This document shows positions 2,216-42,300 of a stretch of DNA of 64,000 nucleotides, in pieces. Under the pieces are notes generated by a model. It saw only the letters and a program-made list of their open reading frames with translations. It was not told the DNA's origin and searched no databases. Source of the DNA: Octopus sinensis (Eukaryota); the NCBI RefSeq assembly GCF_006345805.1, contig NC_043019.1, positions 24,737,360-24,801,359 of the forward strand. The letters are read 5' to 3'. A program made the position numbers and the translations under genes. Within the stretch, counting starts at the first letter, position 1. Every line of letters starts with the position of its first letter.

Positions 2216-3001
2216 ACATACATACATACATACATACACATAAACAGGCACACGTGCACGCCCACAGGCGCGTGCGTATGTGTGTAAGTAAGAGGTGTAA
2301 ATCGTCGCAATTTCTCAGAATATTAAAAAGAAACTGAAAGAAACACAAACAAAACATGTTACTAAATTGCTGACATGGACAGTTGACATAAATTAATATT
2401 TTTTATCTTTCTAATCTCTCTTTTCAGATTTTGGACTTTGTAACTTGAGTATTATTAGTCACTTTTGGCTGATTATATTTAGGCAGGATGAGCTAACAAC
2501 AAAAGCAGTCTGTTTCGAAGAAATCCTTGTTACTATATAAACGAATATTTCGTCTCCTTGTTTTTTGGTGAAACTTATCTGTCACTTTCCTTATTTATTT
2601 TACACGAAATCTACATTTATTCAGTTCGTTTCTTTCTAATAAGCCGTAGTATTTCTATCACCGATGCTCCATTGATCCTTGTTCTCACAAAAAATTGTGG
2701 TTTTAAAAAAATTACCAAAACACTACAAACGGGAATTTATAACTAAAGTCGATCACGATGCGAACATCAAATTTCCTCGCTTTAATTTTACTCGTAAGTA
2801 TTATTTTATATTTCGTTTTGGGATTTGGTTTGCAAGATTCTTTATATGAGTTCGTGTGTTGAAGCATATTCTGTTGTGTCTGGGGAGAGTCATTCTCTTT
2901 TGAGTGTGTTAAATAATAAGGTACTAAAAGAGAATGACTCTCCCCAGACACAACAGAATATTATTTTATATATATGCTGTGAATTTCGTTATACTCTCTC
3001 A

Positions 3002-3158
<157 letters not shown>

Positions 3159-4499
3159 GAGTAGCGTAGCTAGAGTGTTTGCCGTCTACTTCCAGCCCGG
3201 GCCTTCTATCCTACACTGTCAAGTAGCAACCAGCGAGAGAACTTGTCACTGCCACTACAATTACCGTATTTTCCAGTGTATAAGCTGCTATTTGTTTTGT
3301 TTTACCTTCATGTTTTGATAATGTTATCTTTTATCTAATAAAGACTTTTATATTGACGAAATGTGTTTGTTGTTGACTATAGTAAGATGAAATCACAACA
3401 ATAACAATACATCTCATAGTTGTAAAAGAAGGCATTTTGAAACTACATATACGTCAACAACAAAACAAAGCTAACTGCGGACTCGTTGCTCTATAGGTCT
3501 GTTAAACACCGGCGCGCTTTATGTGTGGATAAAACAGCGATGTTGGGCAAACAAATAAATATATGTAAATAATATTTCTTCCTTCTTGGTGTTGATTCTT
3601 CGAACAGAGTGGTGACATTTAGTAGAGATGACCCGGAAGTTGTTCCTCTTCGATTACTATCGCAAACAGTAGTAGCTTTCTTCAACCGAATACACGTCGC
3701 TGATTGGTTGAAATTACCCAAATACGACAACTTTAACACGAAATAACTTCTAAAGTACCAAATTTGTCAAAAATGTTCAAAGTAAACCGTGTTCTGCGTG
3801 AGCCATTCCACCAGTATACGAAGTTTCAAACTGTTTAGTTAAAAAAAATTAATTTAAAAAATCTGTGAGCCAAACTGAACAAAACCTTATTACTATTATT
3901 ATTATTATTATGGCGCACATGACGGAGACGTAACCCGACCCCTCCCCCACTTCAAAAACCTTTTTTAAATCTTTTTATGGAAAACCCACATTTTCGGATA
4001 TGGAGATTCCGATTCTGAAAAACAATTTGCAAAAATCGCATTTCTAAATTTCAATTCCACCGCGTTCGACTTTACCTTTCATCCTTACGGGGTCGATAAA
4101 ATACGTGCCAATTGAACACTGGGGTTGATGTCATCGGCTTACGCGCTTCCCCGAAATTGCTGGCCTTGTGCCAAAATTTGAAATCATCATTATTGTTGTT
4201 ATTGTTGTAGACGTCGTCGTCGTCGTTGTCGTTGTTGTTGTTGTTCTCAAGCTGTTACATGCTTCGATAATTAACAGGAATCTTTACTTGAGGTTTTGGT
4301 GACACAACTCTCCTCAAATCTCAAGAATCTTTCTTAGGATTTTTGCAGAAGACAGGGATGCACTTTTCTGCACATCAACAACGCCTATCTCAATTCCGTT
4401 CTGCCTCGGTTTATTCCATAGCAATTGGAAAATTGTTCGAAGTACACCAATAGTACACCATAATTTCAACAATATGATCAGTCTTTATGGGGAAGTCCC

Positions 4500-4790
4500 A
4501 TAAAATCCTATGTCATCACGTATCTACTGATGGGACACGATGTAGCTAGAACGCTATATAATGAAATTCGTCAGAAGGATAATTTCGATGTCCCAGTGAA
4601 GACCTCAATAAAATATAAGCATAATAGACCTGACATAATGATTTGGGATAGAGTAGAGAAACTGTGTACAGTTGTGGAAATTAGCTGCCCAGCGGATGTT
4701 TACATAAAGCTGAAGATCAGCGAAAAAGAAAACATCTACACTGAACTATTGGGAAATCTGCAGTTATTCTATCCAGATTACAAGTTCCCA
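4500..4790 (+). mobile_element. R4/Dong-like restriction-like endonuclease (REL) fragment
   Basis: KHNRPDIMIWD...TVVEISCP..KISEKENIY has the PD-(D/E)xK REL pattern. Confidence 0.75.
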
Positions 4791-4889
4791 CTGAAACACG
4801 TTTAGTTCCTTCATATTAACTAAAGTATTATATAATTAAGGAAGTACATTAAATACCCAGCTGGACATTTTAGTTATATCCTTTAAGTA

Positions 4890-5030
4890 TTAGGTTGTCC
4901 CAAAAGTTCGTAAACACTTGCGAAAATTGAATTTTTACTCGCCAAGTACTAACAAAAACAACAAAAATTATTCATCAAAATAAAGACCATTATTTTCCAA
5001 GACTTTCTACGAACTTTTGGGACAACCTTA
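4890..5030. mobile_element. 141-bp mariner-type MITE
   Basis: TIRs TTAGGTTGTCCCAAAAGTTCGTA / TACGAACTTTTGGGACAACCTTA, flanked by TA (4888-4889 and 5031-5032). Confidence 0.85.
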
Positions 5031-5349
5031 TATTATTTCGTGATGTGCAAACTGATGCCATGAGTTTACTGTAAGATATACTTATTAGGATATTTTTGCA
5101 TTTTCTGAAATAGAATACCCACTTATGGATTAATCCCCCAAAATTAAATATTGACTTTAATAAAATATTTTGTATATTTATAGATAAATATATAAATATA
5201 TAAATATACGATAAATAAGACTCCAAGGTACGATATGTAGATGCATATAACGCTGTAGGGTTACACCTGATTGATTTTAGCTGATTATATTTAAGCAGGA
5301 TGAACTAACAACAAAAACGGCCTTAATTCCCAATTCTCAAAATAGATAC

Positions 5350-5575
5350 CTATTTCTTTATTACCCACAAGGGGCTAAACACAGAGGGGACAAACAAGGA
5401 CAGACATAGGTATTAAGTCGATTACATTGACGCCAGTGCGTAACTGGTACTTAATTAATCGACCCCGAAAGGATGAAAGGAAAAGTCGACCTCGGCGGAA
5501 TTTGAACTCAGAACGTAACGGCAGAGGAAATACGGCTACGCAATTCGTCCGACGTGCTAACGTTTCTGCCAGCTA
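5350..5575 (-). mobile_element. tRNA-derived SINE family A (core TTCTGAGTTCAAATTCCGCCGAGGTCGAC). Other copies near 4070, 12860, 18000, 18140, 31640, 35560, 35800, 38760, 45905, 46420, 47290, 48210, 51400, 54830 and 58545
   Basis: Many recognisable homologous copies with a Pol III B-box-like GAGTTCAAAT. Confidence 0.85.
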
Positions 5576-5764
5576 ATAGATACCGCTCAATGTTTTAATG
5601 AAACTGTTGACCTTGTTCACTCCTTCGCATTGTACTTGTTTACATGTTTGTTTGTTTTTATATACAATGTCCTAAGCGCTTTTGGGCCCTTGCACCACTT
5701 TATAATTCATATATAATTCAGGGTGGGAGTGTATTTGTGTATAAAGTATATGTGTATGCAGTGT

Positions 5765-6132
5765 GGAGGCGCAATGGCCCAGTGGTTAGGGCAGTGGACT
5801 CGCGGTTTCGATTCCCAGACCGGGCGTTGTGAGTGTTTATTGAGCAAAAATACCTAAAGCTCCACGAGGCTCCGGCAGGGGATGGTGGTTATCCCTGCTG
5901 TACTCTTTCACCACAACTTTCTCTCACTCTTACTTCCTGTTTCTGTTGTACCTGTATTTCAAGGGGCCGGCCTTGTCACTCTCTGTGTCACGCTGAATAT
6001 CCCGAAAACTACGTTAAGGGTGCACGTGTCTGTGGAGTGCTCAGCCACTTACACGTTAATTTCACGAGCAGGCTGTTCCGTTGATTCGGATCAACCGGAA
6101 CCCTCGTCGTCGTAACCGACGGAGTGCTTCCA
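5765..6132 (+). mobile_element. tRNA(Arg)-like SINE family B, tail type 1 (probably an octopus OR-type SINE)
   Basis: Head GGAGGCGCAATGGCCCAGTGGTTAGG..GGTTTCGATTCCC. Near-identical copies at 20953-21333 (-) and 23494-23861 (-). The family name is from recall and is unverified. Confidence 0.85.
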
Positions 6133-6154
6133 CATATGTGTATGCAGTATGCAC

Positions 6155-6745
6155 GATTGTCATTGTTCAGTTTTATTTCAAGATTTCTCGCCAATAGAGA
6201 AAGAACCGGTTTCTAACCTAGATTCAAGGGTCCTTCATTGGAATTTCAACATCAACAGGGTATTTTGTATGTATGTTTTTATGTGTGTATAAGTGCAGAT
6301 TTGTATGTTTTGCTTTATGTATGTATTCTCATGCATATAGTTGCATATATAGACATGCTCATATATATTTAAATGATAAACTTCTGGAAAGTTTTACAGA
6401 TTTTTACAGTTCCAGTGACGGATTGGATCTGTAGTCTTCGAATTAGCTTTCTCCTTTCTGGTTTTGAGAAGTCTAATTTCCCAAGATTGGTATGTAACTA
6501 TCCCAGCGCCCCAATAATTACAGGTATAAACCTGAACTTGTAATCTGGATAGAGTAGCTGCAGATTTCTCAATAGTTCAGCGTAGGTATTCTCTTTTTCA
6601 CTGATCTTCAGTTTTGTTAACAACCGCTGGGCAGCTACTTTCCACAACTTTGCACACTTCCTCTTCTGTATCCCAAATCATTATATCAGGTCTGTTGTGC
6701 TTTCATTTTATTAAGGTCTTCACCGGGACATTCCACCAGTAATCC
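6155..6745 (-). mobile_element. 3' end of an R4/Dong-like element (REL domain plus 3' UTR)
   Basis: The reverse complement aligns by eye with 4590-4790 (HNRPDIMIWD) and continues to the ORF end and an AATAAAA-containing UTR. Confidence 0.75.
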
Positions 6746-6757
6746 TTTTTATGTATT

Positions 6758-6792
6758 ATGTATGTATGTATGTATGTATGTATGTATGTATG

Positions 6793-6823
<31 letters not shown>

Positions 6824-6845
6824 GCATGTATGTATTTATGTATGT
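6758..6845. repeat. (TATG)n microsatellite
   Basis: Direct reading. Confidence 0.95.
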
Positions 6846-7254
6846 TTGCATATATATATGCATGGGTGGTTATATATGTTTACTAATGTAAGGTATGCAA
6901 AGATGTGTGTGTGAGTGTGTGTGTGTGTGTGTGGAGAGAGAGAGGGGGTTAGTGCGAAGGTGTCCTCATGGATCAACTGGGGAATAGTTAAACTAAGTAA
7001 TTAGTCAATATTTATAGTTTATTATTTCTCTGATTATAATTATTACCCCCGCCCTACACACACACACACTCGTTCTTTCTCTCTCTTTCTTTCTCTCCCT
7101 CTCTCTCTCTCCTTCTCAGTCTATATAAGGATGTGGTCTGATCCAATATAATCACAGTTGTCAGGGTCTCGTTCATTGAAGTGAAGAGCTGATGGTCACA
7201 ATGGATGGGGGGGAGGGGTCCGTTTCCTGGTCTTTGGCTCCAAATATCACCAAA

Positions 7255-7900
7255 TGTTGTTGTTGTTGTTGTTGTTGGTGGTGGTGTTGGTGGTGGTGGT
7301 GGTGGTGGTGGTCGTCGTCGTCGTCGTCATCGTCGTGAATAGGAGGAACAGCAAGAGAGTAGAGGATGGGGATGAAAATGAGAAGAGGAAGGGGAGAGGA
7401 GAGGAGAGGAGGAGGAGGCGTATGTTCATGGTAATAATGATGCTTCTGTTGTTTTTGTTTGTCCCAAGTCAGCCTTGATTAAATAGACTTATCATCGAAG
7501 GCGCTCCAGCGTGACCATCCAGTCATTATTCCAGACATAGACTATCTATAACCTAGGCTGTCTTTCTTTTAAGGTGACAGGGGGCGATTTGAAAGACATT
7601 TAACTTCTATATTTGACAGGTCAAGCGATGAGGGATGATGTGTCTCGTTGTTGTTGTTGTTGTTGTTGATGATGATGTTGTTGTTGTTGTTGTAGCTGTC
7701 GTTGGTTTTGATGATGACGACGACAATGATGATGATGCTGATGGTGGTGGTGGTGGTGGTGATGGTGGTGGTGGTGGTGGTGGTGGTGGTGGTGGTGGTG
7801 GTGGTGGTGGTTGTGGTGGTGGTGGTGGTGGTTGTGGTGGTGGTGGTGGTGGTGGTAGCGGTGGTGGTGGCGGTGGTGGTGACGATGATGATGGCGATGA
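7255..7900. repeat. Compound triplet low-complexity tracts (GTT/GGT/GTC/GAT)
   Basis: Direct reading; the source of the poly-V/G/T/P ORFs. Confidence 0.95.
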
Positions 7901-8539
7901 CGGGAAGGAGGCGAAGCATAGTAGTGATATTGTAGATAATGATGGTGACCATGATGTTTGCATTGATTTTTATCCTCATTTATCTTTTACATTTGGACTG
8001 CGGTCATGCTGGGGCACCGCCTTGAAGTGTTTTGTTGACCAAATGAAACTCAGTAATCAGTTTTAAAACTTGCGCTTACTCTATCGATCTCTTTCTTTTT
8101 GTTGAACCACTAAATTACGGGAGCGTAAACAAACGAGTCCCGGATGTCAACATAAAGACAGCACATATAATAACACAAATGAGCTGAGATTCTCTACACC
8201 TGTTTCAGACCTGCTTTTAATGATGAACAAAACAATTACATCATAATAAAAAAAAAGACTCAAAAATTCTAGAATGCATTGTGACACTTTCATCACTCTC
8301 AATTGGCACCGAGATGAGAGAGACAAAATACATTCTAGAATTTTGCCATCAAAAAACCTGAATATTAAATTTTAGATTTTAGATTTTAATTCACTTGTAA
8401 AAAACGGGTCTTTTTTTTCACATGATGTAATCGATTTGTATATCAAGAAAACACATATCAAGAAAACACATGTCTGAAACAGCTGTAGAACATTTGCGTT
8501 ATTATTTATGCTACACCACACTCCGAACTTTACCTTGGA

Positions 8540-9510
8540 CCTAAAGTGGATCTTGTGCCTAAACATCTTGAACCTAAACATCTTGAACCTAAACATCTTG
8601 AGCCTAAACATCTTGAACCTAAACATCTTCAACCTAAAGATTTTGAGCCAAAAGATCTTGAACCTAAAGATCTTCAACCTAAAGATTTTCAACCTAAAGA
8701 TCTTCAACCTAAACATCTTGAGCCTAAACATCTTGAAACTAAAGATCTTGAACCTAAACATCTTGAACCTAAAGATCTTGTGCCTAAACATTTTGAACCT
8801 AAAGATCTTGAGCCTAAATATCTTGAGCCTAAAGATCTTGGACCTAAAGATCTTGAACCTAAACATTTTGAGCCTAAACATCTTGAACCTAAACACCCTG
8901 AACCTAAAGACCTTGAGCCTAAAGATCTTGAATCTAAACATCTTGAGCCTAAACATCTTTTAACTAAAGATCTTGAACCTAAACATCTTGAACCTAAACA
9001 TCTTGAACCTAAACATCTTCAGCCTAAAGATCTTAACCTAAAGATCTTCAACCTAAACATCTTAAACCTAAACATCTTCAACCTAAACATCTTCAACCTA
9101 AACATCTTGAGCCTAAAGATCTTCAACCTAAAGATCTTCAACCTAAAGATCTTCAACTTAAAGATCTTGAGTCAAAAGATCTTGAGCCTAAAGATCTTAA
9201 CTTAAAGATCTTAACCTAAAGATCTTGAACCTAAAGATCTTGAGCCTAAAGATCTTAACCTAAAGATCTTAACCTAAAGATCTTGAACCTAAACATCTTG
9301 AACCTAAACATCTTGAACCTAAACATCTTGAACCTAAACACCTTGAACCTAAAGATCTTGAGCCTAAAGATCTTCAACCTAAAGATCTTCAGCCTAAAGA
9401 TTTTCAACCTAAAGATCTTCAACCTAAACATCTTCAACCTAAACATCTTGAACCTAAACATCTTGAACCTAAAGATATTCAGCCTAAAGATCTTGAGCCT
9501 AAAGTGGATC
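8540..9510. repeat. 15-bp minisatellite, about 65 units, consensus CCTAAA(C/G)ATCTT(G/C)A(A/G), with five 14-bp variants
   Basis: Direct reading. Bounded by the direct repeat CCTAAAGTGGATC at 8540-8552 and 9498-9510. Confidence 0.97.
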
Positions 9511-9744
9511 ATGGATTGCATGCTAGAGTATATATATCGTTGTGTGATTTTACATATACGTTGAGTGTACCTGGTCTATACATGCGGATGTATGCATACG
9601 TGGAAGGACAAATCTGTATATGCTCTAGTATGTATGTTAGTCTCCATACACATTGTCGGTACACACTGTCCTTAACTCTACCTGGATGTGCTTATTATTA
9701 AACTACCTCGATCCTATTGGATCCCGAAAATAATTGTGTGTGTA

Positions 9745-9905
9745 TGTGTGCGTGTGTATACGACTGGATTCTTTCAGCATCCGTCAACCAAATCTGCACG
9801 TAAAGCTTTGGTAGGCCTGAAACTATAGCAGAAGACACTTGTCTAATGTTCCATGCAGTGGGACTGAACCCAGAACTACGTGATTGGGATGCAAACTTCT
9901 TACCC
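9745..9905 (-). mobile_element. Partial tRNA-derived SINE family C. Fuller copies at 12161-12550 (+), 30845-31228 (-) and 57905-58252 (+)
   Basis: Shared GGCTGTGTGGTAAGTAGCTTGCTTACCAACCACATGGTTC...GGATTTGGTAGACGGAAACTG. Confidence 0.8.
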
Positions 9906-9996
9906 CACAGTCTGTATTCATTGTTAATGTTTTTACTGTGATTATTAATTGATTTTTTTGTTATTTCTAATTTTACGTTTATCTCATTGTATTCAG

Positions 9997-11652
9997 GTGT
10001 ATGGAATATATACAAGCCCAATCGTGAAACAGCTGGTAAGAAGCGCCCAAACAAATAATGAACGAAATTCAATAACAACAACGATAACAAGAGAATATCC
10101 TGTTGCGATAACGGAGACAACGACATATAAGAATACGAAAATAAGTCTCCGGAATGACACAACCATTTCAGGTGAAGAAATCACTTCGAAAGTAACTACA
10201 CACACAGCATTAGCAAAGGCATCTGGGACGACATCAGCATCAACAACAACGAGACCAACAACAAGAACAGCAACAACAACACCAAGAACAATAACAAAAA
10301 TAGCAACAAAAATAGTAACACCAGCAACTTCAAAAATAGCAACACCAACAGCAACAAAAATAGCAATACCACCAGCAGAAACAGGAACGCCAACAACAAA
10401 AATAACAACTCTAACAACAACAACAACAACAACAACAATAGCAACACCAAAAACAACAACAGTAGCAACGCCAACCCCAACAAAAATAACAACACCAACG
10501 ACAAAAATAGCAACACCACAACCAACACCAAAAACAACAAGAATAGCAACACCAACAACAGCAAAAATAGTGACAACACCAACAACAAAAGCAGCAACAA
10601 CACCGACAACAAAAATAGCAACACCAAAAACAACAACAGTAGCAACGCCAACCCCAACAAAAATAACAACACCAACGACAAAAATAGCAACAACACCACC
10701 AACAAAAATAGCAACAACACCACCAACAAAAATAGCAACAACACCACCAACAAAAATAGCAACACCAAAAACAACAACAGTAGCAACGCCAACCCCAACA
10801 AAAATAACAACACCAACGACAAAAATAGCAACAACACCAGCAACAAAAATAGCAACAACACCGCCAACAAAAATAGCAACAACACCGCCAACAAAAATAG
10901 CAACAACACCACCAACAAAAATAGCAACAACACCGCCAACAAAAATAGCAACAACACCACCAACAAAAATAGCAACAACACCGCCAACAAAAATAGCAAC
11001 AACACCGCCAACAAAAATAGCAACAACACCAACAACAAAAATAGCATCAACACCGCCAACAAAAATAGCAACAACACAGCCAACAAAAATAGCAACAACA
11101 CCGCCAACAAAAATAGCAACAACACCACCAACAAAAATAGCAACAACACCGCCAACAAAAATAGCAACAACAACAACAAAAATAGCAACAACACCACCAA
11201 CAAAAATAGCAACAACACCGCCAACAAAAATAGCAACAACACCACCAACAAAAATAGCATCAACACCGCCAACAAAAATAGCAACAACACCAACAACAAA
11301 AATAGCAACACCAACAGCAACAAAAACCTCAAAAATTACAAGTGCATCAACAATAAAAACAACAACACCAGACATATCAACTGGAGGTTTTTCAACTGAT
11401 CAATCTTTCCCGTCAACCTCCGTGACTAACAACAACACAATGACGACATCTACGTCCAAACATGGCTCAAATAAAAAACATTCAGTGTCTACAGCAGCCA
11501 TTGTCGTGAGTACCATCTTCAGTCTTGGCGTCGCCATTGGATTCTTTATTGTGGCATATAGAATCATCAGGAAGCGTTGGTTCGTTGCCGAAGGATATAA
11601 CTTACTGGACTTGGAAGAAGTCACTACTGATCGTGAGCCGAAGAAATACTAG
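9997..11652 (+). CDS. Terminal coding exon of an orphan Thr/Pro-rich mucin-like type I membrane protein (first exon and signal peptide not located)
   Basis: Branch-like CTAAT and a pyrimidine tract lead to CAG|GTG at 9996/9997, in frame. The 1.65-kb frame is stop-free, with TKIATTPP repeats, TM segment AAIVVSTIFSLGVAIGFFIVAY, basic RIIRKR, a short tail containing EGYNLL, a stop, and AATAAA at 11776. Confidence 0.78.
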   Translation: MYGIYTSPIVKQLVRSAQTNNERNSITTTITREYPVAITETTTYKNTKISLRNDTTISGEEITSKVTTHTALAKASGTTSASTTTRPTTRTATTTPRTITKIATKIVTPATSKIATPTATKIAIPPAETGTPTTKITTLTTTTTTTTIATPKTTTVATPTPTKITTPTTKIATPQPTPKTTRIATPTTAKIVTTPTTKAATTPTTKIATPKTTTVATPTPTKITTPTTKIATTPPTKIATTPPTKIATTPPTKIATPKTTTVATPTPTKITTPTTKIATTPATKIATTPPTKIATTPPTKIATTPPTKIATTPPTKIATTPPTKIATTPPTKIATTPPTKIATTPTTKIASTPPTKIATTQPTKIATTPPTKIATTPPTKIATTPPTKIATTTTKIATTPPTKIATTPPTKIATTPPTKIASTPPTKIATTPTTKIATPTATKTSKITSASTIKTTTPDISTGGFSTDQSFPSTSVTNNNTMTTSTSKHGSNKKHSVSTAAIVVSTIFSLGVAIGFFIVAYRIIRKRWFVAEGYNLLDLEEVTTDREPKKY

Positions 11653-12129
11653 CATCTTCAAAGCGACGAACAAAATGTCAAAGCAAGGCCTAATAGAACC
11701 AATTCGGCCTATGTTATCGCCTTTGATTCCGGTCTTGCAGAAATCAACTTTGCCTTTCATCCGTCCGAAATCGATAATAAAAAATTGTTCCTATCAAGTC
11801 TTTGCAACCTATTACCATCTTTCAAATTTACAGTTTTAAGGCTATAACGGATATGGTTATTAGAAGGGGTAGATAAAAATAGTGGAGGATAAATGAAGCA
11901 AGAAGTGGGATTAAACTGTAGTAAGAAGGATTAAACTGGATTTGGGGGGAGATTAGCAAAACGTAGGAAAATTGAAAATGTAATGTGTTTCCTTTCTCAT
12001 GCAGCAAAGAATGACTTGAATTGGTTTTCTGTACGCGCGTGCGTATGCGGGGCCAGGCGTTAAGTTCAAGAACAGAACTTTTTGCATTACATTCATTCCT
12101 TAGTTACGTATGTTTCAACAATAAGCACT

Positions 12130-12161
<32 letters not shown>

Positions 12162-12744
12162 GGCTGTGTGATAAGTAGGTTGCTTTACCAACCACATGGT
12201 TCCAGGTTCAGTTCCACTGCATAGCACCTTGGGCAAGTATCTTCTAATTTAGCCTCGGGCTGACCAAAGCCTTGTAAGTGGATTTGGTAGACGGAAACTG
12301 AAAGAAGCCTGTCGTATATATGTATGTGTGTGCGTGTGTGTATGTAATTATGTATGTATGTCTGTGTTTGTCCCCCCACCATCGCTTGACAAACGATGCT
12401 GGTGTCTTTACGTCCCCGTAACCTAGCGGTTCAGCAAAAGAGACCGATAGAATAAGTACTAGGCTTACAAAGAATAAGTCTTGGGGTCCATTTGCTCGAC
12501 TAATGGCAGTACTCCAGCCTGTCCGCAGTCAAATGACTGAAACAAAGAAAAAAGAATATATATAAAAGTTAAAAGCATATAATGCACAAACAAACAGAAA
12601 ACAGACACAGAAGGTCACCAAATCCTCATCAGTTATCAGCCAGAGGGTCAGACGCAATTTCGTGCCTTTAACGATAATAATATTGGTCCAGTCTGTTGAC
12701 GCCGGGAAATAGTGAGCCAATGTAGAGGAGACCATACATACATG

Positions 12745-15907: not shown

Positions 15908-16298
15908 ACATCATGCTCGGAATGGTCAGTGGCAAGAAGGACATCATGCTCGGAATGGTCAGTGGCAAGAAGGACATCATGCTCGGAATGGTCAGTGGCA
16001 AGAAGGACATCATGCTCGGAATGGTCAGTGGCAAGAAGGACATCATGCTCGGAATGGTCAGTGGCAAGAAGGACATCATGCTCGGAATGGTCAGTGGCAA
16101 GAAGGACATCATGCTCGGAATGGTCAGTGGCAAGAGAGGAATAGGCCGACCAAGAACTCGCTGGCTTGACACCATCAAGAGGGATACCGGAATGGACATA
16201 GCCAGTCTGAAAGAAGCGGCCCAGGATAGAACTGACTGGAGGACACTGATCCATCGAGTAACCGAGAGTCGGCTTCGACTGAGCGGATAGATAGATAG
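15908..16298 (+). mobile_element. 5'-truncated RTE LINE 3' end whose 5' part is a perfect 33-bp tandem array (6 full units plus a 7th reading into the ORF)
   Basis: GKRGIGRPRTRWLDTIKRD...DRTDWRTLIHRVTESRLRLSG* matches the RTE ORF2 C-terminus, followed by a (GATA)n tail. Confidence 0.85.
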
Positions 16299-18843: not shown

Positions 18844-18887
<44 letters not shown>

Positions 18888-19066
18888 CACACACACACAC
18901 ACTCGCACATACACACGCACACACACATACCCATACACACACATACACACATACATACACACACACATACACACACACACACACTTGCACACACGTACAC
19001 ATAAATGCACATACACATACATACATGCACAGACACACATACACGCACACGTACATGCACATGCGC

Positions 19067-19109
<43 letters not shown>

Positions 19110-23879: not shown

Positions 23880-24830
<951 letters not shown>

Positions 24831-24849: not shown

Positions 24850-27778
24850 TCTTTATATATAAAAGTGAAGTTGTGTGAGTGTCTGTCTCCTACGATTTAG
24901 ATTCCTAACTACTCCCACATTTTGCGGTGCAGTTTAACCAAAAGCGGGTATCTTATAGTCGTGATTCATATCGAGCCCTTCTGGGTATTAGCGCGCGTCT
25001 ACGATGAGTCTACGATTTTAAAAACAATTTACCATCATTTTTTCCCATTTTTAATGCATTTTTTGCTATTATATAAGGGAAGTAACTCTCTAAAAATGCT
25101 TATATAGTTATTTCCCTTGCAAATCCGAGCAACGCCAATGCCAGACATTATCCTCCTTGGTGACTTCAACTTCCCTAACATCATCTGGCCACATGGACAC
25201 ATACTAAAACTGGGGACAAAAGCTGAACAAATACAGGCAGCCAAACTGTTGGAAGTCACAGAGAAATTATACCTCAAACAAATGATGACAGAAGCAACAA
25301 GAAATAATAATACGATCGACTTGGTTTTCACCAACAACGAGGACACGCTATTTGACCTTCACTCAACCCCAACAATCCTTTCAGACCACAATATTATTGA
25401 AATGCATTTACACATTGGTAATGAGCCCAATGCCACAACTCTTAAACAAAAGGACATGCCAAAGCTATGCAGGTATGATTATCACCAGGCAAATTGGGAA
25501 ACTATTAACAACCAGTTACAAATCATTGACTGGGATCTCTACCTTACTGGGCCAGATAAACACAAGAAATTCTTAAACAAGATCGAAGAAATATGTAAAA
25601 AAAATGTTCCTCTAAAGAAAACCAAGTCCACAAAAAAACCTGTACCACGGGAGCGAAAGATCCTGATGCGCAAAAGGTCAAGACTAAGAAACAAAACATC
25701 TAAGCTGACATCAAAACATGAATTACAGAAAGTCCTTGACCAAATATACAGATTAGAAGACAATCTAAAACAACACTATGATGAAGAACGTAGCAATGCA
25801 GAAAAGAAAGCCATAGAAAACATCAAGAAAAATCCAAAATGTTCTATAGTTTTGCAAAGAAATACTCGAACACCAAGTCAACAATAGGACCTCTCCAGAG
25901 ACAAAATGGGGATGTAGTGAATAACCCTATTGAAATGGCAGAAATGTTGGGTCAACAGTATGAAAGTGTCTTCAGTGAGCCATCTAAAACCATGAAGATC
26001 CATGACCCAGGAAAATTCTTCAAGGATATCGACCATACTAAACCTACCCTATCCGACATTGATTTCAACCCAGAAGACATAGCAAGAGCAATAGACAAGC
26101 TCTCCATGCACTCGGCTGCGGGGCCTGACGGTTTCAATGCCATGATACTTAAAAACTGCAAGGCACAATTGTCGAAACCCCTTTACATGATATGGAGGGA
26201 ATCTATGGAGAATGGCAAAATACCAAATACATATAAAGAAGCACACATAACTCCAATACATAAAGGGGATAGCAAATCAAAACCAAAGAACTACCGACCA
26301 ATCTCACTGACATCACACATTATCAAGGTCTTCGAAAGAATAGTTCGTGGAAAACTGGTTGAATTCCTGGAATCCAACAATCTGATGAATTGCAACCAGC
26401 ATGGATTCAGGTTAGGTAGATCATGCCTTTCCCAACTACTGGCACACCATGACCAAATCCTAGAAAATCTAGAGAATGGATACAACACAGATGTTATCTA
26501 CCTCGACTTTGCCAAGGCATTTGACAAGGTAGATCATGGCATCCTGGGTCACAAACTTCGAAAGCTAGGAGTAGGAGGAAAAGTTGGTACATGGATAAAC
26601 GAGTTCCTTACAAATAGAACTCAAACAGTCACTGTGAATGGAACCCATTCAACACCATCACCTGTGACCAGCAGTGTTCCTCAGGGTACAGTACTCGGCC
26701 CAATCCTGTTTCTCATCCTCATCTCTGACATAGATGAAGATACAACCAGCAACGTCTCATCCTTTGCTGATGACACCAGGGTCATGAGACAAATCAAAGA
26801 CGAGGTGGATACAGAGGCCTTACAAAAGGACCTGACCACCATATATAAATGGCAGGAAACAAACAACATGTTGTTCAATGATAAGAAGTTTGAACTAATT
26901 CGCTACGGAACAGATCAAGATCTGAAAAATACAACAAACTACAGAAACCATCAGGACAACAAATAATGGAAAAACAGTATGTGAAAGATTTAGGCATCCA
27001 CATGGGAACCAACCTAAAATTCAGAGAACACCTTGACTCAGTCTGTCTTACTGCAAGAAAGTACAGCGGTGGATCTTGCGCACCTTCAAATCAAGAGATA
27101 CCTCAACAATGAAAACCCTCTGGAACAGTATGATACTTCCGAGGATTGACTACTGTTCTCAGTTGTGGTCACCAACAACAAAGGGCCAACTATCTAAGAT
27201 AGAATCGCTCCAAAGAAATTTTACCTCATACTTCTCAGAAACGAGGGACCTGGACTATTGGCAAAGACTCAAAACCTTGAGGATGTACTCAATAGAAAGA
27301 AGATTTGAGCGATACCGAATTATATACATTTGGAAAATGATAGAGCAGAAGGTGCCAAACTTTGGTATCAAAACCTACCACTCACTGCGCCACGGAAGAC
27401 GCTGCCAGCTGCCACCAATCAACAAAAAGGCTAGCCAGGCAGCAAAAACCCTGCGAGAATCAAGTCTGTTGGTTCGAGGAGCACAACTGTTCAACTCCAT
27501 TCCGGTACATGTCAGAAATCTATCAGGATGCAGTGTGGAATCATTCAAATTGCAACTGGATAGATACTTAAGCACCATTAGAGATGAACCCCATCTCCCA
27601 GGATATACACAACGAGCACAAACTGACTCAAACTCGCTCCTACACATGTCAAATTTAAGCAGAGAATACAACCTGGCAACCACACCAGACTCTGAGGGTG
27701 GAGTCTTCGACTTGGCCTGAGCATGGACTCAAACCCAAATGAAATGAAATGAAATGAAACGCCGGGCGATACTGCTAG
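24850..27778 (+). mobile_element. Non-autonomous Helitron (24850-25136 plus 27758-27778) split by a LINE insertion
   Basis: Same family as 14473: A|TC start and ...GCCGGGCGATACTGCTAG|T end. Confidence 0.9.
25137..27757 (+). mobile_element. CR1-clade LINE, 5'-truncated ORF2 (partial APE endonuclease plus complete RT) with three 1-bp frameshifts
   Basis: GDFNFP, IDLVFTN and SDHN (APE); AAGPDG, NYRPISLT, QHGFR, YLDFAKAFDKVDH, VPQGTVLGPILF and FADD (RT). Stop at 27720, (GAAAT)n tail, 6-bp TSD AACGCC (25131-25136 and 27758-27763). Confidence 0.95.
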
Positions 27779-28427: not shown

Positions 28428-31400
28428 ATGGACGAAAATCTCTCCACTGTTCTTCATTCTAAGGGCGATCTGAGGATGGTCTGTGCAATTTACATTATCT
28501 ATTTATTCATTTAGTCTTCCGTTTTATTTCTCTTTGCTCCCCATTTTGCATTTCTTTTCTTTGGCAACTTTTATATTTATAGATGCATGTATATTATCTT
28601 TAAAACTTTAAAGTTTTTTCGTACAACGAAGGAAGTAGGGGGTCGTTGCTAAACGAAGAATTATCGGTTGCTTCTTACATTAACATCGTACCAAAAATAT
28701 AAACAGATAAAATATTATGTATATATATATTATATCTGCATGCATGTATGTCGTCTTAGAGTTGGGTCACCTGCTCGTGGGTAAAACTTTAAAAATTTGG
28801 GTCTTGCTTTCGTAACCCTTCGGGCGAGTATTTAACCTTTATATGTTAAAGTTGAGCAGATATTTATCGCCCTAGATGTTGTGACCATTTGTAGCGTATG
28901 AATTATGGAACTACGATTTCTCTCCAAGAATCCAAGTTCTACTGCATCTATGTATGTATGTATACATGTATGTATATTTCTTTACTACGCACAAGGGCTT
29001 AACACAGAGGGGATAAACAAGGTATGCATGTATGTATGTATGTGTGTGTGTAGGCATGCATGTAATGAATGTAATCTAAATGTATGCATGTATGTATGTG
29101 TAGCTATGTATTTCTGTATATGATGCATGTAAATATATGTATTTCTCAGGCTTGGGAACATGAGGTGCAGGGGGTGCGTTTGTACCCACAAAAATTTTTG
29201 GTGGGGTGCAATGAAAATGCTTTGAACATCCCGAGTTTAACCCCCTAAGCCTGTTTCGTTCCAGCACTTTACATGTATATATATATATATATATTCGTGT
29301 GTGTGTGTACATAAATAACGCATGTTCATACGGATATGTATGCATACATACATATGCATGTGTATATAAACATATCTATATACATATGTATACTGTGTAT
29401 ATAACTGCGTATAACATGTATACATATTCATGAATATACTTTGATAATGTTCATAACAAAGTTGGTTTTTGTTTACGAAACCGGAAAAAAGAAAATCGAA
29501 CGCTCCAAGAGATGTTTCTATTCGGTGTGTTGGGGAACTGGAAAACCTGTCTTTTTACCTCTTTGTTTTGTTATTTGAACCATGTTATGTAATCTTAAAA
29601 CTGTAGACACAGCATTTTATGTGTGTCTGTGTTTGAAATAAAACGATCACTTAAATTTTTGTTGTTTTTTTTATCAATATGATGTTGATGTAATTTCGTC
29701 AGACCTATCCAATTAATGTTTTACAAAGTATTTCAACAATTATATTACTTATTTTTCTGTTTTGATATTTAATATTCAATAAAAGAAAGAGTGTCAGTCT
29801 CCATCCAAAAAAATAAACTTTAAAACCAATTCCGTTTTACTGATTTAATTCCGGTTGGCATTTTATAAAAGAGGTTTCGATACTACGATCTAGTCTTTAA
29901 AAGCTAGAAAGATCAGTCATGGTTCATTTGTTCCAACTTCTCAACATGGAAAAAGTTTTAAAGTTTATATCTCAACGAAAAGACCCATGTTCTAAATACG
30001 TGTTTTTGTTATTTCTATTTTTTTAATTAACAATTGACGCACTCCCAGGTTAGCTCTTATAGAATAGATCTATGTTCAAAAATAGGTACTCATATAATAG
30101 AGATTTGGCTATTATTTCTGCATAAAACAGCGGTGAGGGTCAACGACTCTTTCATGTGCTACTTTAGTTCGCATTCAGATGAGAAACCGCCCCCTTCGCA
30201 AAAGCATTTTAAAAAGCCGTTCTAAACCACAAACCCGACCGAAACGAATTTGATTATAAGATGCACAGCAAGTTCTAGGTGTTTCTAATTAAAGATTCAC
30301 TTTTTTTTTCGCAGCACAAATTCGTCCCACAGTTTCTTATATTACATTACACCCCGCCGCCCTAGTAATAAGATTCTCACCCCTGGTGTAGGGTGACTCT
30401 CCCGTTTGATAAGACCTGTTATAACTGGATTGTTCTTGTTATGATTTACAGAGATAAGATTAAGTAAGTCGTTCGTATTCCCACGTTATTCAGGCGTCTT
30501 CTAGTGTTGAGAGGAAGGTCGATCTCGTTTCGACCGTCGATTGTAGCCCCCATTTAATAAACTTTATAAACCCACTTCTTCTAACTTAAACTCCAGTTTT
30601 TCTTCTATAAAATCCATCAAATCTTGATATTTACTATCTTCGTGTCGTTTTACGACGTCTCTATAATGCTCGGTGCCCATTTCTTCATCGTGGGATAAAT
30701 GTACCCATGACGAAGTTTTCTAATCACGGCTCGTACTCAAGCAAATATCGACTTTGTGGTTAGTTTCTGAATATCATTTATAGATTCATATCAAAGAGAG
30801 AAATCAGAAATGATTTCTTACATTCTCTTTTACTCTTTTTCTCTTTTACTTGTTTCAGTCATTTGACTGCGGCCATGCTGGAGCACCGCCTTTAATCGAG
30901 CAACTCGACCCCGGGACTTATTCTTTGTAAGCCCAGTACTTATTCTATCGGTCTCTTTTGCCGAACCGCTAAGTGACGGGGACGTAAACACACCAGCATC
31001 GGTTGTCAAGCGATGCTAGGGGGACAAACACAGACACACACATATATATATATATACATATATACGACAGGCTTCTTTCAGTTTCCGTCTAACAAATCCA
31101 CTCACAAGGCATTGGTCGGCCCGGGGCTATAGCAGAAGACACTTGCCCAAGATGCCACGCAGTGGGACTGAACCCGGAACCATGTGGTTGGCTAGCAAGC
31201 TGCTTACCACACAGCCACTCCTGCACCTATGGTTATTTTTTATTTTTATTTTTATGGGTTGTAATGGGTCAGCCAATTATATCGTCCCAGTATTTCTGTT
31301 TCTTTAATAAATGATCGACCCCTAAAAGGATGAAAACCAAAGTCAGTGAATTCTTTCATTAGTATTACAACTCAACCAGAAAGATGTGGTGGAGTGATAA

Positions 31401-39300: not shown

Positions 39301-42300
39301 ATGTCTGTTGTATTCCATGGCATCTGAGAGAATGTGATAATTGATGTGTGTTGAAAAGTGGGTGCATGAATACGTTTTCATATTTATGTGAACTGTGTAA
39401 AACTATACATTGATGTATAGCTTTAGCCCTTTAGTATTTAAACCATCCATATCCGGCCAAAATAGCTAATCTGTTTTATGTTCAAACTGACCAGATCCAG
39501 CCTCTCACACCTACCCTGCAATGTTATTCTACATTAAGTAATTACACCATCAACATCTTGAAGATATGAGATAATGCATGATTAATTCGAATCAATGGGA
39601 ATCAATAGGCATTATGTTTGATTGAATAATCTGAACACTAAAGGGTCAAACCAAACAAAATTAAATCTCCCCCACCCCACCACCATCAAATGCCATCCTG
39701 TTTACATACATGGCTGTTTATCTCCGTAGTTTTTCACATGAACTTGTTGTCTATTTTCAGGTCCCATTGGACTTTGTTGTTTTCTCACAGCAAAAGCAAT
39801 GGGAGCAGCTAAAGTGTGCATGACAGGTAAGTTGCAAAGGAAATAATGCTTGGCTCTCATTGTAAATTTCAAACCCAATTGAAATGCATTTCTGAAATAG
39901 TTCAAAGCTCAGCACCAAATTCTTCCTGGTTTTGTAATTCCTATTGACTCTGCTCATCATCATCATCATCGTTTAGCGTCCACTTTCCATGCTAGCACAG
40001 GTTGGACGGTTCAACTGGGATCTGGGAAGCCAGAAGGCTGCACCAGGCCCAGTCTGAGCTGGCAATGTTTCTACGGCTCAATGCTCTTCCTAACGCCAAC
40101 CACTCCGTTAGTGTAGTGGGTGCTTTTTACGTGCCACCGGCACAGATGCCAGATGAGGCTGGCAAACGGCCATGATCGGATGGTGCTTTTTATGTGCCAC
40201 CAGTGCAGGTGCCAGACGAGGCTGGCAAATGGCCACGATCGGATGGTGCTTTTTACATGCCACCGGCACGAGGCCAGTTGGGGCGGCGCTGGCAACGGCC
40301 ACGTTCGGATGGTTCTCTCACGTATCACAGCTGCAATTTTCATTGATGTTGATCGATTTCGATTTTCACTTGCCTCAACAGGTCTTCACAAGTAGAGTTT
40401 GGCACACCAAGTTGGCTATTGCAACTATCACATTTCTTTGTGTGTCACTGAAGTAAACTGTTATGGTTTTGTCTTATACGTTCATTATTATACATTTACA
40501 TAAACATGTGAAAGTCTGGTCAGTGGGACCAACAACCATTTTTCTGTCAGCATAAATCAACAAATGCACATTTGCCTGTGTTAATGCAATGCAACCATAG
40601 CCACGTCAAACTGGTGGACCTGTTGTATTCTCATGTTTTGCAAACAACTTATATATGCAAGTGCTACCAGTCCAAAGCTCTGCATACTGGAAGCCAGCAA
40701 GTGTATGGGGTCATCAGGAAAGATGAATACCTCTCGACAGCATCATTGTACACTGCCCTCACTGATATGAGGCCCCACTTGCTAGATCAACTGGTTATCA
40801 AATAAGGCTCAATATTAATAATAATAATAATGAAATTATTGTATACAATGCTCAGGTGCACCACAACTTGTCAGAAAGTATGTATAAAGTATATGCAGTA
40901 ATGTACAAATGTCTAGAAAGCGAATAATGTATGAGTCAGATACATGCTTGTGTGTGTATGGAGGGGAGAAAATCAGGTGTAGTGTTGGCGAATCTCAGGA
41001 AGCATGGAAGTTTTGAAGGATGCAGTGCTCCGACAACTAACAACTGATGCCAGCAGTTTGTTCCATGCTTCAGCAACTCTCAGCGTCAAAAAATGTTTCC
41101 TAAAGTCATGGGAGCTGTGCTGTTTTCTGACTTTGTAAATATGTCCACGGATGTTAGACAGGTGGAGTTTGAAAAGGTGCTCAGAGTTATTGTTTGTATT
41201 CTTCTAGCCATCGCTCATTGTCTCTTTTTAACAAAATCCAGTGGCTAACCCTTTCCACTGTAGTTTGGATATTGGTCATGGTGGTATTTAACTGATAAGA
41301 AACACGATGAAAGAGCTACATACATCAAAAACATTAATGTATGTCAACACACACACACATAATTTCAAACTGTATCTTTGTTTCTTCACAGATGTTGACA
41401 GCCAGCGCCTGGAATTTGCCAAAAAGGTAGGGGCTGACCATGTTCTCTCTGTGAGAGCAGGTACTTCCAAAGAACTTGCTTCTCAGATTGAGAACCTCTT
41501 GGGGAAAAGTCCTGATATTTCACTTGAATGCAGTGGGAACCCTGCTGGTTTAAAAACATCTATTTTGGTAGGTTACTATAATTCCCTCTCTCTCTCTCTC
41601 TCATTTATATATATATATATGTGTGTGTGTGTGTAATATATATATATGTATATATATTCACTTTATCTCCTTTTCTTTTCTTCAATAATATTTGCTTTAT
41701 TCTTTTAATCATTTTTTTTCTGACATAATGAATCTAGAACTATATTATCTAATATGTACTTTACTTTATTTGAAGTTAAGGTGTTACTTGAGGGTGATTT
41801 GTCTGCTATTTCTAGTAAGTCAAGTCTCAAGTGATTCAAGAGAGAGCACCTTTGCCTTCCAATTTCAAACCAGCCACTGACAAACTCTCTAAAGATTCAT
41901 CAAAATGCTTGAAGTGTCATTACTAAAACAATAAATTAATACAAATTATAAATAAATAATCTTTTTTTTCTCAGCAGAGATGTCAACGCTACAAGTTGTG
42001 ATGTTTTTGCCAATTTGTCCCTAATGCTAATGAGGTTCTTTGTTCTTAATGTAAATTCTCTCTTGATGCAAAATAGTAAAAATGTTCATAATGTTTATCA
42101 GATGATCTTGACTGATTGATCAGAATTCTTTCAATCCATGGTTTGCTTTTTAAATATTGATCTGTGGACGTCTGTCTTTTATTGTTGTTTCTTGCCAGGC
42201 AACAGCCAGTGGCGGATGTGTTGTCATGGTTGGCATGCAACCTGATGAAGTTACAGTTCCTTTGTTGAATGCTGCAGTCCGTGAAGTAGACATAAGGGGC

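What the first reader, a model, noticed from the sequence alone, without database searches (positions are those of the whole stretch)
9997..11652. Orphan membrane mucin with overlapping tyrosine and dileucine sorting signals
Seen: an about 480-aa Thr/Pro/Lys-rich, Cys-free ectodomain with N-glycosylation sequons (NDT, NNT), one TM helix, and an about 30-aa tail containing EGYNLL. This fits both GYxxL and ExxxLL. Known: these motifs bind AP adaptor complexes in endocytosed or lysosomal proteins such as LAMPs and CD164. I recognise no family. Inference: a lineage-specific glycocalyx or endolysosomal sialomucin-like protein. The supplied TTG start is intronic, so a signal-peptide exon must lie upstream.
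Basis: partly seen in the sequence, partly recalled or inferred. Interest (0 to 1): 0.7.

Follow-up and report, generated by a model that had tools for sequence, protein, structure and literature searches.

The report
Octopus-only membrane mucin gene
This is a real two-exon octopus gene for a single-pass membrane protein with a long sugar-bearing repeat stalk and a short conserved tail; it is a lineage-restricted example of a familiar protein type, not a new kind.

Summary
Exon 2 (9997-11652, +) encodes a Thr/Pro/Lys-rich, Cys-free ectodomain, one TM helix and a 30-aa tail containing EGYNLL. The ectodomain is built from about 30 copies of a 24-nt unit (TTPPTKIA). The only relative found is a 163-aa Octopus bimaculoides protein (UniRef A0A0L8G9F3). 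It starts MRTSNFLALILL|VYG. Those 12 codons lie at 2758-2793, followed by a GTAAGT donor, and they join in phase to the cag|GTG acceptor at 9997. The intron is 7.2 kb and the spliced protein is 563 aa.

An exhaustive HMMER search of the TM plus tail against 1.84 billion representatives found only that orthologue. UniRef calls the orthologue 'Syndecan/Neurexin domain-containing', but this label failed every test here: no Pfam PF01034 hit, 4.7 bits against a syndecan HMM, and hhalign probability 16% over 10 columns.

The two N-glycosylation sequons are no more than chance. The overlapping YxxΦ/[DE]xxxL[LI] hexamer is rare by chance (0.1-0.5% per tail) and identical in both species, but so is nearly the whole tail.

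Function (surface glycocalyx protein with adaptor-mediated internalisation) is inferred, not shown. 'Sialomucin' is unsupported. Verdict: a new member of a known kind, of modest interest.

The parts
2534..2541 (+). Candidate TATA box (TATATAAA), 217 nt upstream of the ATG
   Evidence: Read from the sequence. Inferred only; there is no transcript data.
2758..2793 (+). Exon 1 coding part: MRTSNFLALILL, the n-region and most of the h-region of the signal peptide
   Evidence: tblastn of P0001 gave a 13/13 identical match at 2758-2796. The ATG and reading frame were read. The segment is hydrophobic and is predicted helical at residues 3-18 in the AF2 model of the orthologue.
2794..9996 (+). Intron 1 (7.2 kb). 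It has a GTAAGT donor at 2794-2799 and a pyrimidine tract plus cag acceptor at about 9950-9996. It contains (CA)n, (TGG)n, a 15-bp minisatellite (8549-9504) and a SINE (about 9750-9910).
   Evidence: The exon 1/exon 2 junction LL|VYG is the same as in the O. bimaculoides protein.
9997..10255 (+). Start of exon 2. It holds the end of the signal peptide (VYG|IYTSP, a likely cleavage site) and the non-repeat N-terminal ectodomain. This segment includes the NDT sequon and an SGEE site.
   Evidence: About 80% identical to P0001 over VYG...PVAI, followed by a 27-aa segment absent from P0001.
10256..11340 (+). Pro/Thr-rich (PTS) tandem-repeat array with a 24-nt unit (TTPPTKIA, about 30 clean copies plus variants). 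It shows 48/72-nt higher-order structure (CCA/CCG alternation). A 75-nt block is present three times without a mismatch (10438, 10615, 10756).
   Evidence: TRF period 24, 45.5 copies, score 845; periods 48 and 72, score 1136. Unit table. Identical blocks.
11341..11490 (+). Non-repeat Ser/Thr-rich juxtamembrane stalk (SASTIKTTTPDISTGGFSTDQSFPSTSVTNNNTMTTSTSKHGSNKKHSVS), with the NNT sequon
   Evidence: Most of it is absent from the 163-aa orthologue model.
11491..11559 (+). Transmembrane helix TAAIVVSTIFSLGVAIGFFIVAY, containing GVAIG (GxxxG)
   Evidence: Kyte-Doolittle peak of 2.5. AF2 helix with the highest pLDDT of the model. 100% identical in P0001.
11560..11652 (+). Cytoplasmic tail of 30 aa plus the stop codon. 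EGYNLL lies at 11590-11607 (YxxΦ overlapping [DE]xxxL[LI]). LLDLE lies at 11602-11616 (a clathrin-box-like pattern).
   Evidence: 27/30 identical to P0001, and WFVAEGYNLLDLEEVTTD is invariant.
11776..11781 (+). AATAAA, a candidate polyadenylation signal 124 nt after the stop codon
   Evidence: Inferred only.

Best explanation
This is a genuine two-coding-exon gene of an octopus. It encodes a 563-aa type I membrane mucin.

Shown:
- A short signal peptide is split across a 7.2-kb intron.
- The ectodomain is about 495 aa, Cys-free and probably disordered. Its core is a tandem array of about 30-40 octapeptides (TTPPTKIA).
- There is one TM helix and a 30-aa tail, and the tail is almost unchanged between two octopus species.

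Inferred:
- The Thr-Pro context makes the array a dense substrate for mucin-type O-GalNAc glycosylation. That would give an extended, bottle-brush stalk on the cell surface or on a luminal face. The peptide backbone is unusually basic (60 K+R against 9 D+E, pI about 10.9).
- The array grew by replication slippage or unequal exchange, as shown by the higher-order units and the three identical 75-nt blocks.
- The tail's EGYNLLDLEE cluster most likely serves as an adaptor-binding signal: YxxΦ for the mu subunit and [DE]xxxL[LI] for the sigma/large-subunit hemicomplex of AP complexes. The protein would then be internalised from the plasma membrane or routed to endosomes and lysosomes.

The gene, the topology and the repeat anatomy are shown. 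Glycosylation, localisation and adaptor binding are inferred.
For: Gene model:
- P0001 (O. bimaculoides, UniRef100_A0A0L8G9F3) is 93-95% identical over the TM plus tail and begins MRTSNFLALILL|VYG.
- Its first 13 residues match window 2758-2796 exactly. An ATG, a GTAAGT donor and a cag|GTG acceptor lie in compatible phase.
- The non-repeat flanks are open in frame with P of about 6e-6.
- All repeat-unit length variants are multiples of 3.

Architecture:
- Composition, TM span and tail.
- The AF2 model of the orthologue shows helices only at the signal peptide and at the TM/juxtamembrane region. pLDDT is below 50 across the Thr-rich region.

Repeats.

Motifs:
- Matches to all three patterns, and the rarity of the overlap.
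- The motif region is invariant between the two species.

Context: mucins are defined by function, not ancestry, and arise repeatedly when exonic PTS repeats are gained (PMC9417175).
Against: - No transcript, protein or expression data could be reached. The exact 563-aa product is not in the 15-billion-protein collection, and P0001 has no contig on record.
- The orthologue model has only about 3 repeat units and lacks two ectodomain segments. Repeat number and the stalk are therefore unconfirmed outside this window, and the short model may be an assembly or annotation artefact.
- Motif conservation is uninformative. Only 3 of 57 TM+tail residues differ at all between the two species.
- Short linear motifs of this kind occur by chance in a few proteins per proteome.
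- The GYxxΦ is not at the LAMP-like distance from the membrane or at the C-terminus.
Confidence: 0.55

Rival explanations
1. The protein is a divergent member of the syndecan / neurexin / glycophorin C tail family, as the automatic UniRef name implies. Under this reading the juxtamembrane YRIIRKR...EGY is a degenerate band-4.1/FERM-binding ('4.1m') site. The mucin would be anchored to the cortical cytoskeleton, like syndecans, CD43 or PSGL-1, rather than sorted by AP adaptors.
For: - A source names P0001 'Syndecan/Neurexin domain-containing protein'.
- The membrane boundary ...FIVAYRIIRK resembles the syndecan ...LLLVYRMRKK.
- An EG-Y follows a basic cluster, and the TM has a GxxxG.
- The tail length (30 aa) is syndecan-like.
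- One Ser-Gly sits in an acidic context (SGEE).
Against: - There is no PF01034 match at E<=10, either for the window protein or for P0001, and the precomputed Pfam field for P0001 is empty.
- An HMM built from 51 PF01034 proteins scores 4.7 bits, and 66 of 2000 tail shuffles do as well.
- The cytoplasmic-only HMM scores -2.0 bits, worse than most shuffles.
- hhalign gives probability 16% over 10 columns.
- The invariant syndecan KKDEGSY and the C-terminal EFYA are both absent (one search compared with the sequence).
- The SGEE segment is missing from P0001.
Confidence: 0.15
2. The tail tyrosine is a phosphorylation-dependent signalling site. EGYNLL would act as a hemITAM-like or SH2-docking YxxL preceded by an acidic residue and Gly. 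The mucin would then be a signalling or phagocytic-type receptor rather than passive cargo.
For: The tail contains a single conserved YxxL with upstream E-G and a downstream acidic run. This is pattern resemblance from general knowledge only.
Against: There is no recognisable ligand-binding domain in the ectodomain. There is only one YxxL. The same residues fit the sorting motifs equally well. Nothing here tests phosphorylation.
Confidence: 0.1
3. This is not a functional gene. An A/C-rich minisatellite happens to be open, and the octopus gene models are annotation artefacts or a decaying, unexpressed locus.
For: - The repeat is open in two forward frames and in reverse frames too (460-aa and 378-aa antisense ORFs).
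- No expression evidence was obtainable.
Against: - 218 non-repeat codons are open in phase with the array (P about 6e-6).
- The signal-peptide exon with its canonical splice sites is conserved 12/12. The TM plus tail is conserved 54/57 between species, while the ectodomain has diverged (58% over the N-terminal query). This is a pattern of purifying selection on the anchor.
- All indels among the units preserve the frame.
Confidence: 0.07

Closest known systems
Small single-pass membrane mucins of vertebrates (PSGL-1, CD43/leukosialin, endomucin, MUC21/epiglycanin). From general knowledge.
   Same: Both have the layout signal peptide, short N-terminal region, tandem Pro/Thr-rich repeats of 8-15 aa, one TM helix and a short tail with a juxtamembrane basic cluster. 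Neither has SEA, EGF or Cys-rich domains.
   Different: There is no detectable sequence relationship. The octopus backbone is strongly basic, with one Lys per octapeptide. The tail motifs are different.
Endolysosomal mucin-like proteins: CD164/endolyn (Pfam MGC-24) and LAMP-1/2
   Same: Both are type I, heavily Thr/Pro-rich on the luminal side, with a short tail carrying a G-Y-x-x-Φ type tyrosine signal.
   Different: - The MGC-24 profile scores only E=1.9 on P0001 and gives nothing on the window protein.
- There are no Cys-containing domains at all.
- In LAMPs and CD164 the YxxΦ ends the protein a few residues from the membrane. Here it starts 12 residues after the TM and is followed by 14 residues.
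Syndecans (Pfam PF01034, 'Syndecan/Neurexin domain')
   Same: Both have a single TM with GxxxG, a tail of about 30 aa, and a ...V/A-Y-R-(M/I)-x-(R/K)-K membrane boundary. UniRef labels the orthologue this way.
   Different: The protein lacks the invariant KKDEGSY and the EFYA C-terminus. Profile tests are at noise level. The ectodomain is a PTS repeat rather than a glycosaminoglycan (GAG)-attachment region.
Lubricin/PRG4 (KEPAPTTP repeats) and Trypanosoma cruzi TcMUC (T8KP2 repeats). From general knowledge.
   Same: Both have short Thr/Pro/Lys repeats, and lubricin's repeat is also an octapeptide. The chemistry of the repeat is therefore convergent.
   Different: Lubricin is secreted, and TcMUC is GPI-anchored. 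There is no homology, and this comparison was not tested here.

Membership tests
Mucin / mucin-like protein (a functional class) | Exonic tandem repeats rich in Pro, Thr and Ser | tested here: met
   A 24-nt unit, about 45 copies by TRF. The unit is TTPPTKIA. The ectodomain is 42% S+T and 14% P.
Mucin / mucin-like protein (a functional class) | Entry into the secretory pathway (signal peptide) | tested here: met
   The exon 1 peptide MRTSNFLALILL joins VYGIY... It is hydrophobic, has R2 in the n-region and V-Y-G at -3 to -1, and is conserved in P0001. No dedicated signal-peptide predictor was available.
Mucin / mucin-like protein (a functional class) | Dense O-glycosylation of the repeat domain | not testable with these tools
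   Only the favourable Thr-Pro context can be read from the sequence.
Syndecan (Pfam PF01034) | Significant match to the family profile | tested here: not met
   - No PF01034 row at E<=10 for the window protein, its C-terminal 108 aa, or P0001.
- The home-built syndecan HMM scores 4.7 bits, and the cytoplasmic-only HMM scores -2.0 bits.
- hhalign gives probability 16%.
Syndecan (Pfam PF01034) | Invariant C1 box (Y-R-M-x-K-K-D-E-G-S-Y) and C2 terminus (E-F-Y-A, a PDZ ligand) | tested here: not met
   The invariant columns of 26 syndecans are Y R.. K K D E G S Y. L and the terminal E..A. The window has YRIIRKRWFVAEGYNLL and ends PKKY.
Syndecan (Pfam PF01034) | Ser-Gly glycosaminoglycan attachment sites in the ectodomain | tested here: inconclusive
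   There are two SG dipeptides (aa 70 and 88). One is in SGEE, but that segment is absent from P0001.
CD164/endolyn (Pfam PF05283) and LAMP | Family profile match, Cys-containing luminal domains, and YxxΦ at the extreme C-terminus | tested here: not met
   PF05283 gives E=1.9 on P0001 only, and there is no LAMP hit. There are 0 Cys. The motif is internal to the tail.
Cargo with AP-adaptor sorting signals | YxxΦ and [DE]xxxL[LI] patterns in a cytosolic tail, at least 7 residues from the membrane | tested here: met
   YNLL lies at tail positions 13-16 and EGYNLL at 11-16. This is a pattern match only.
Cargo with AP-adaptor sorting signals | Actual binding to AP mu / sigma-large subunits, and motif-dependent trafficking | not testable with these tools
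   This needs binding and trafficking assays.

The most novel reading that the evidence does not exclude
This is an octopod-restricted gene created by 'mucinisation', meaning expansion of an A/C-rich minisatellite between a signal peptide and a membrane anchor. Its conserved tail packs three overlapping clathrin-pathway codes into ten residues (EGYNLLDLEE): YxxΦ, [DE]xxxL[LI] and a clathrin-box-like LLDLE. Such a cargo could engage both AP-2 sites, and possibly clathrin directly. It would serve as a cephalopod functional analogue of endolyn or LAMP, built independently and carrying an unusually cationic mucin backbone.
Probability: 0.12. Interest if true: 0.45.

Novelty: new member of a known kind. 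Interest (0 to 1): 0.27.

Why it matters
If expressed, this is a clean invertebrate example of a lineage-restricted membrane mucin: a minisatellite-derived O-glycosylation stalk joined to a conserved anchor. It illustrates outside mammals the convergent route to mucin function described by Pajic et al. 2022 (PMC9417175).

It also corrects two annotations. The public O. bimaculoides model (163 aa) is probably repeat-collapsed. Its 'Syndecan/Neurexin domain' name is not backed by profile tests.

The compact overlapping tyrosine/dileucine/clathrin-box-like segment would make a convenient natural test case for motif competition, but it does not open a long-standing question.

Tried and rejected
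1. Pfam scan of the exon-2 protein, of its N- and C-terminal non-repeat parts, and of P0001 gave only noise (best E=0.011, all below the curated cut-offs).
2. Word-indexed searches of 5.8 billion clusters with the C-terminal 108 aa and with the N-terminal 99 aa found only P0001.
3. An exhaustive phmmer search of the 59-aa TM+tail against 1.84 billion representatives found only P0001.
4. A PDB sequence search of the TM+tail at E<=10 found nothing.
5. Exact look-ups: the 563-aa spliced product is not in the collection, and P0001 has no contig on record. I could therefore retrieve no orthologous DNA, no dN/dS estimate and no synteny.
6. The syndecan hypothesis was tested three ways and rejected.
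7. An Rfam scan of the window found nothing.
8. Literature searches for the accession and for cephalopod membrane mucins found nothing specific.
9. An AF2 model of the orthologue had mean pLDDT 53. It is useful only for showing helices at the signal peptide and TM and disorder elsewhere, so no fold search was attempted.
10. I considered a C-terminal KKxx ER-retrieval or PDZ ligand reading of ...EPKKY. It was rejected because the lysines are at -2/-3, not at -3/-4 or -3/-5, and the end does not resemble EFYA/EYYV.
11. I considered the antisense ORFs (460 and 378 aa) and the intronic 'DLEPK' ORF as genes. They were rejected as by-products of low-complexity repeats.
Full report
WHAT IS THERE. The window is eukaryotic DNA. 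It contains microsatellites, SINE copies and a non-LTR retrotransposon with endonuclease and reverse-transcriptase domains, and it has no Rfam match. At the reported coordinates the ORF table shows a 567-aa open frame, 9949..11652 (+).

Read from 9997, that frame encodes four parts in order:
- An 86-aa non-repeat, Thr/Ser-rich N-terminal segment (to 10255).
- A long array of Thr/Pro/Lys octapeptides.
- A 50-aa Ser/Thr-rich stalk.
- A hydrophobic span TAAIVVSTIFSLGVAIGFFIVAY, then the tail RIIRKRWFVAEGYNLLDLEEVTTDREPKKY and the stop codon.

THE REPEAT. Tandem Repeats Finder reports a period of 24 nt (45.5 copies, 80% matches). It also reports higher-order periods of 48 and 72 nt. Splitting the translation at K-I-A gives about 30 clean TTPPTKIA units. 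The middle Pro codon varies between CCA and CCG from unit to unit, often in alternation, which explains the 48-nt period. There are occasional single-residue variants (TTPTTKIA, STPPTKIA, TTQPTKIA, TTPATKIA). Units of 7, 16 or 20 aa also occur, and every length variant is a multiple of three. A 75-nt block encoding IATPKTTTVATPTPTKITTPTTKIA is present three times without a mismatch, at 10438, 10615 and 10756. The array has therefore grown by recent internal duplication. The repeat is also open in a second forward frame and on the reverse strand (460-aa and 378-aa ORFs). Those are low-complexity by-products.

IS IT A GENE? Four lines of evidence say yes.
(i) The 218 non-repeat codons flanking the array are open in the same frame. 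At the window's own stop-codon frequency (0.054 per codon) this has P of about 6e-6.
(ii) The C-terminal 108 aa hit exactly one protein among 5.8 billion clusters. It is P0001, 163 aa, UniRef100_A0A0L8G9F3 from Octopus bimaculoides (E=4.6e-26, 95% identity). The N-terminal query hit the same protein (58% identity over 95% of the query).
(iii) P0001 begins MRTSNFLALILLVYGVYTSP.... A tblastn of P0001 on the window finds MRTSNFLALILLV, 13/13 identical, at 2758-2796 on the same strand. The DNA there reads ATG CGA ... TTA CTC | GTAAGT. Upstream of 9997 lies a pyrimidine-rich tract ending ...tattcag | GTG TAT GGA. Exon 1 (2758-2793, 12 codons) therefore joins exon 2 in phase 0, exactly at the LL|VYG junction of the orthologue.
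(iv) Conservation is uneven in the way expected for a functional membrane mucin. The signal-peptide exon is 12/12 identical. The TM helix is 100% identical and the tail 27/30 identical. The ectodomain is much more diverged and differs in length.

The spliced product is 563 aa. A TATATAAA at 2534 and an AATAAA at 11776 are compatible with a compact transcript, but they are only read from the sequence.

An AlphaFold2 model of the orthologue, aligned with the window protein, shows helices only at residues 3-18 and 20-39 and at 111-148 (the TM plus juxtamembrane region). pLDDT is below 50 across the Thr-rich region. This fits a signal peptide, a disordered stalk and a TM anchor.

HOW FAR DOES THE FAMILY REACH? 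An exhaustive phmmer search of the 59-aa TM+tail against 1.84 billion representatives returned only P0001. PDB sequences gave nothing at E<=10. Pfam gave only sub-threshold noise. The exact 563-aa product is not in the 15-billion-sequence collection, and P0001 has no contig on record. I could therefore not retrieve orthologous DNA, synteny or transcripts. Within the reach of these databases the gene is restricted to octopuses. The depth of cephalopod sampling in those databases is unknown to me, so 'octopod-specific' is provisional.

THE 'SYNDECAN/NEUREXIN' LABEL. UniRef gives P0001 the automatic name 'Syndecan/Neurexin domain-containing protein'.
- I retrieved 58 PF01034-annotated syndecan C-terminal sequences.
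- I cut 51 of them to the TM plus cytoplasmic domain and built an HMM. The window tail scores 4.7 bits and P0001 scores 6.9 bits, and the alignment covers only the TM and YRxxKK.
- With the TM held fixed and the tail shuffled, 66 of 2000 shuffles score at least as well. Against a cytoplasmic-only HMM the real tail scores -2.0 bits, below the shuffle mean of -0.6.
- hhalign of the octopus pair against 26 diverse syndecans gives probability 16% over 10 columns (FIVAYRIIRK against LLLVYRMRKK).
- The columns invariant in syndecans (KKDEGSY, terminal E..A of EFYA) are not present.

The resemblance is therefore limited to a generic membrane-boundary Tyr-Arg plus a basic cluster and an 'EG-Y' three residues further along. 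Membership is not met. A functional similarity (a FERM/4.1-binding juxtamembrane site) cannot be excluded and is kept as a rival.

THE TAIL MOTIFS. EGYNLL matches YxxΦ (YNLL) and [DE]xxxL[LI] (EGYNLL) simultaneously. The next residues make LLDLE, which fits the clathrin-box pattern LΦxΦ[DE] (pattern definitions are from general knowledge).

Chance rates:

| Pattern | Random 30-mers | Shuffles of this tail |
|---|---|---|
| YxxΦ alone | 18% | 44% |
| Dileucine alone | 4% | 7% |
| Overlapping hexamer | 0.11% | 0.54% |
| All three patterns | about 0.01% | about 0.03% |

The arrangement is uncommon, but among the thousands of membrane proteins in a proteome a few such tails are expected by chance. 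The block is identical in O. bimaculoides. However, only three residues differ in the whole TM+tail, so conservation does not single out the motif. The tyrosine lies 12 residues from the membrane and 17 from the C-terminus. This is unlike the LAMP/CD164 arrangement and compatible with endocytic YxxΦ signals in general.

The N-glycosylation sequons add nothing. Two are observed against 3.3 +/- 1.4 expected from composition, and both lie in segments missing from P0001. Nothing in the sequence bears on sialylation, so 'sialomucin' is unsupported.

MOST LIKELY MECHANISM. Shown: a secretory-pathway type I membrane protein with a repeat-built, Cys-free, probably disordered ectodomain and a conserved anchor.

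Inferred:
- The Thr-Pro-rich octapeptides are densely O-GalNAc glycosylated and form an extended stalk in the glycocalyx or on a luminal membrane face.
- With one Lys per unit (60 K+R against 9 D+E, pI about 10.9) the backbone is unusually cationic. This may matter for interaction with anionic glycans or surfaces.
- The tail signal recruits AP complexes for internalisation or endolysosomal delivery.

I put about 0.9 on the gene and its architecture, and about 0.4 on the adaptor-sorting role specifically. This gives 0.55 for the combined statement.

COMPARISON AND NOVELTY. In architecture the protein works like small vertebrate membrane mucins (PSGL-1, CD43, endomucin, MUC21). Its repeat chemistry resembles lubricin's KEPAPTTP or T. 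cruzi T8KP2 repeats. Those are analogies from general knowledge, not homology. Mucins are a functional, not an evolutionary, class and arise repeatedly by gain of exonic PTS repeats (PMC9417175). This gene fits that picture in a cephalopod. It is a new, lineage-restricted member of a known kind. A truncated orthologue model is already public under a misleading automatic name. Interest is modest.

Noticed in passing
window 8549-9504 (+), inside intron 1: A 15-bp minisatellite with 64 copies and 87% matches (GATCTTGAACCTAAA). It is open in several frames and gives a 219-aa 'HLEPK/DLEPK' ORF on the gene's own strand. It has no counterpart in the orthologue protein, so it is treated as intronic satellite rather than an exon.
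   Followed up: partly
window ~9750-9910 (+); also 12199-12215 (-), 31164-31180 (+), 57952-57968 (-), 61864-61880 (-): A tRNA-like SINE with the core GGGACTGAACCCAGAAC. One copy ends about 90 nt upstream of the exon-2 acceptor. There are 5 matches in the window against 0.1 expected.
   Followed up: partly
window 25117-27720 (+): A non-LTR retrotransposon ORF2 split into three ORFs. It has an endonuclease domain (Exo_endo_phos_2, E=1e-10) and a reverse transcriptase domain (RVT_1, E=9e-31). ORFs at 841-1916 look like the tail of another such element but have no Pfam hit.
   Followed up: partly
window 15908-16140: A 33-bp tandem repeat with 7 copies at 99% identity. It is open on both strands (ATDHSEHDVLL / DIMLGMVSGKK units). 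Its origin is unknown.
   Followed up: no
window 40119-40277 and 57020-57235: The same 62/63-bp tandem unit (GGTGCTTTTTACGTGCCACC...) occurs at two places 17 kb apart. It is probably an internal repeat of a dispersed element.
   Followed up: no
window 11602-11616 (+): LLDLE directly overlaps the EGYNLL hexamer and fits the clathrin-box pattern LΦxΦ[DE]. The TM helix carries a GxxxG (GVAIG, 11539-11553).
   Followed up: partly
P0001 (O. bimaculoides A0A0L8G9F3) compared with window 10126-10206 and 10306-11478: The public orthologue model lacks a 27-aa N-terminal segment, nearly all repeat units and the juxtamembrane stalk. The window has no GT/AG sites at the corresponding boundaries. The short model therefore probably reflects assembly collapse, gaps or real deletions rather than splicing.
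   Followed up: partly
window 7742-7881 and 3000-3158, 18847-19106, 24533-24639: A long (TGG)n run (47 copies) and several (CA)n microsatellites. They produce spurious poly-Gly, poly-Thr and Cys-Val ORFs in the ORF table.
   Followed up: no
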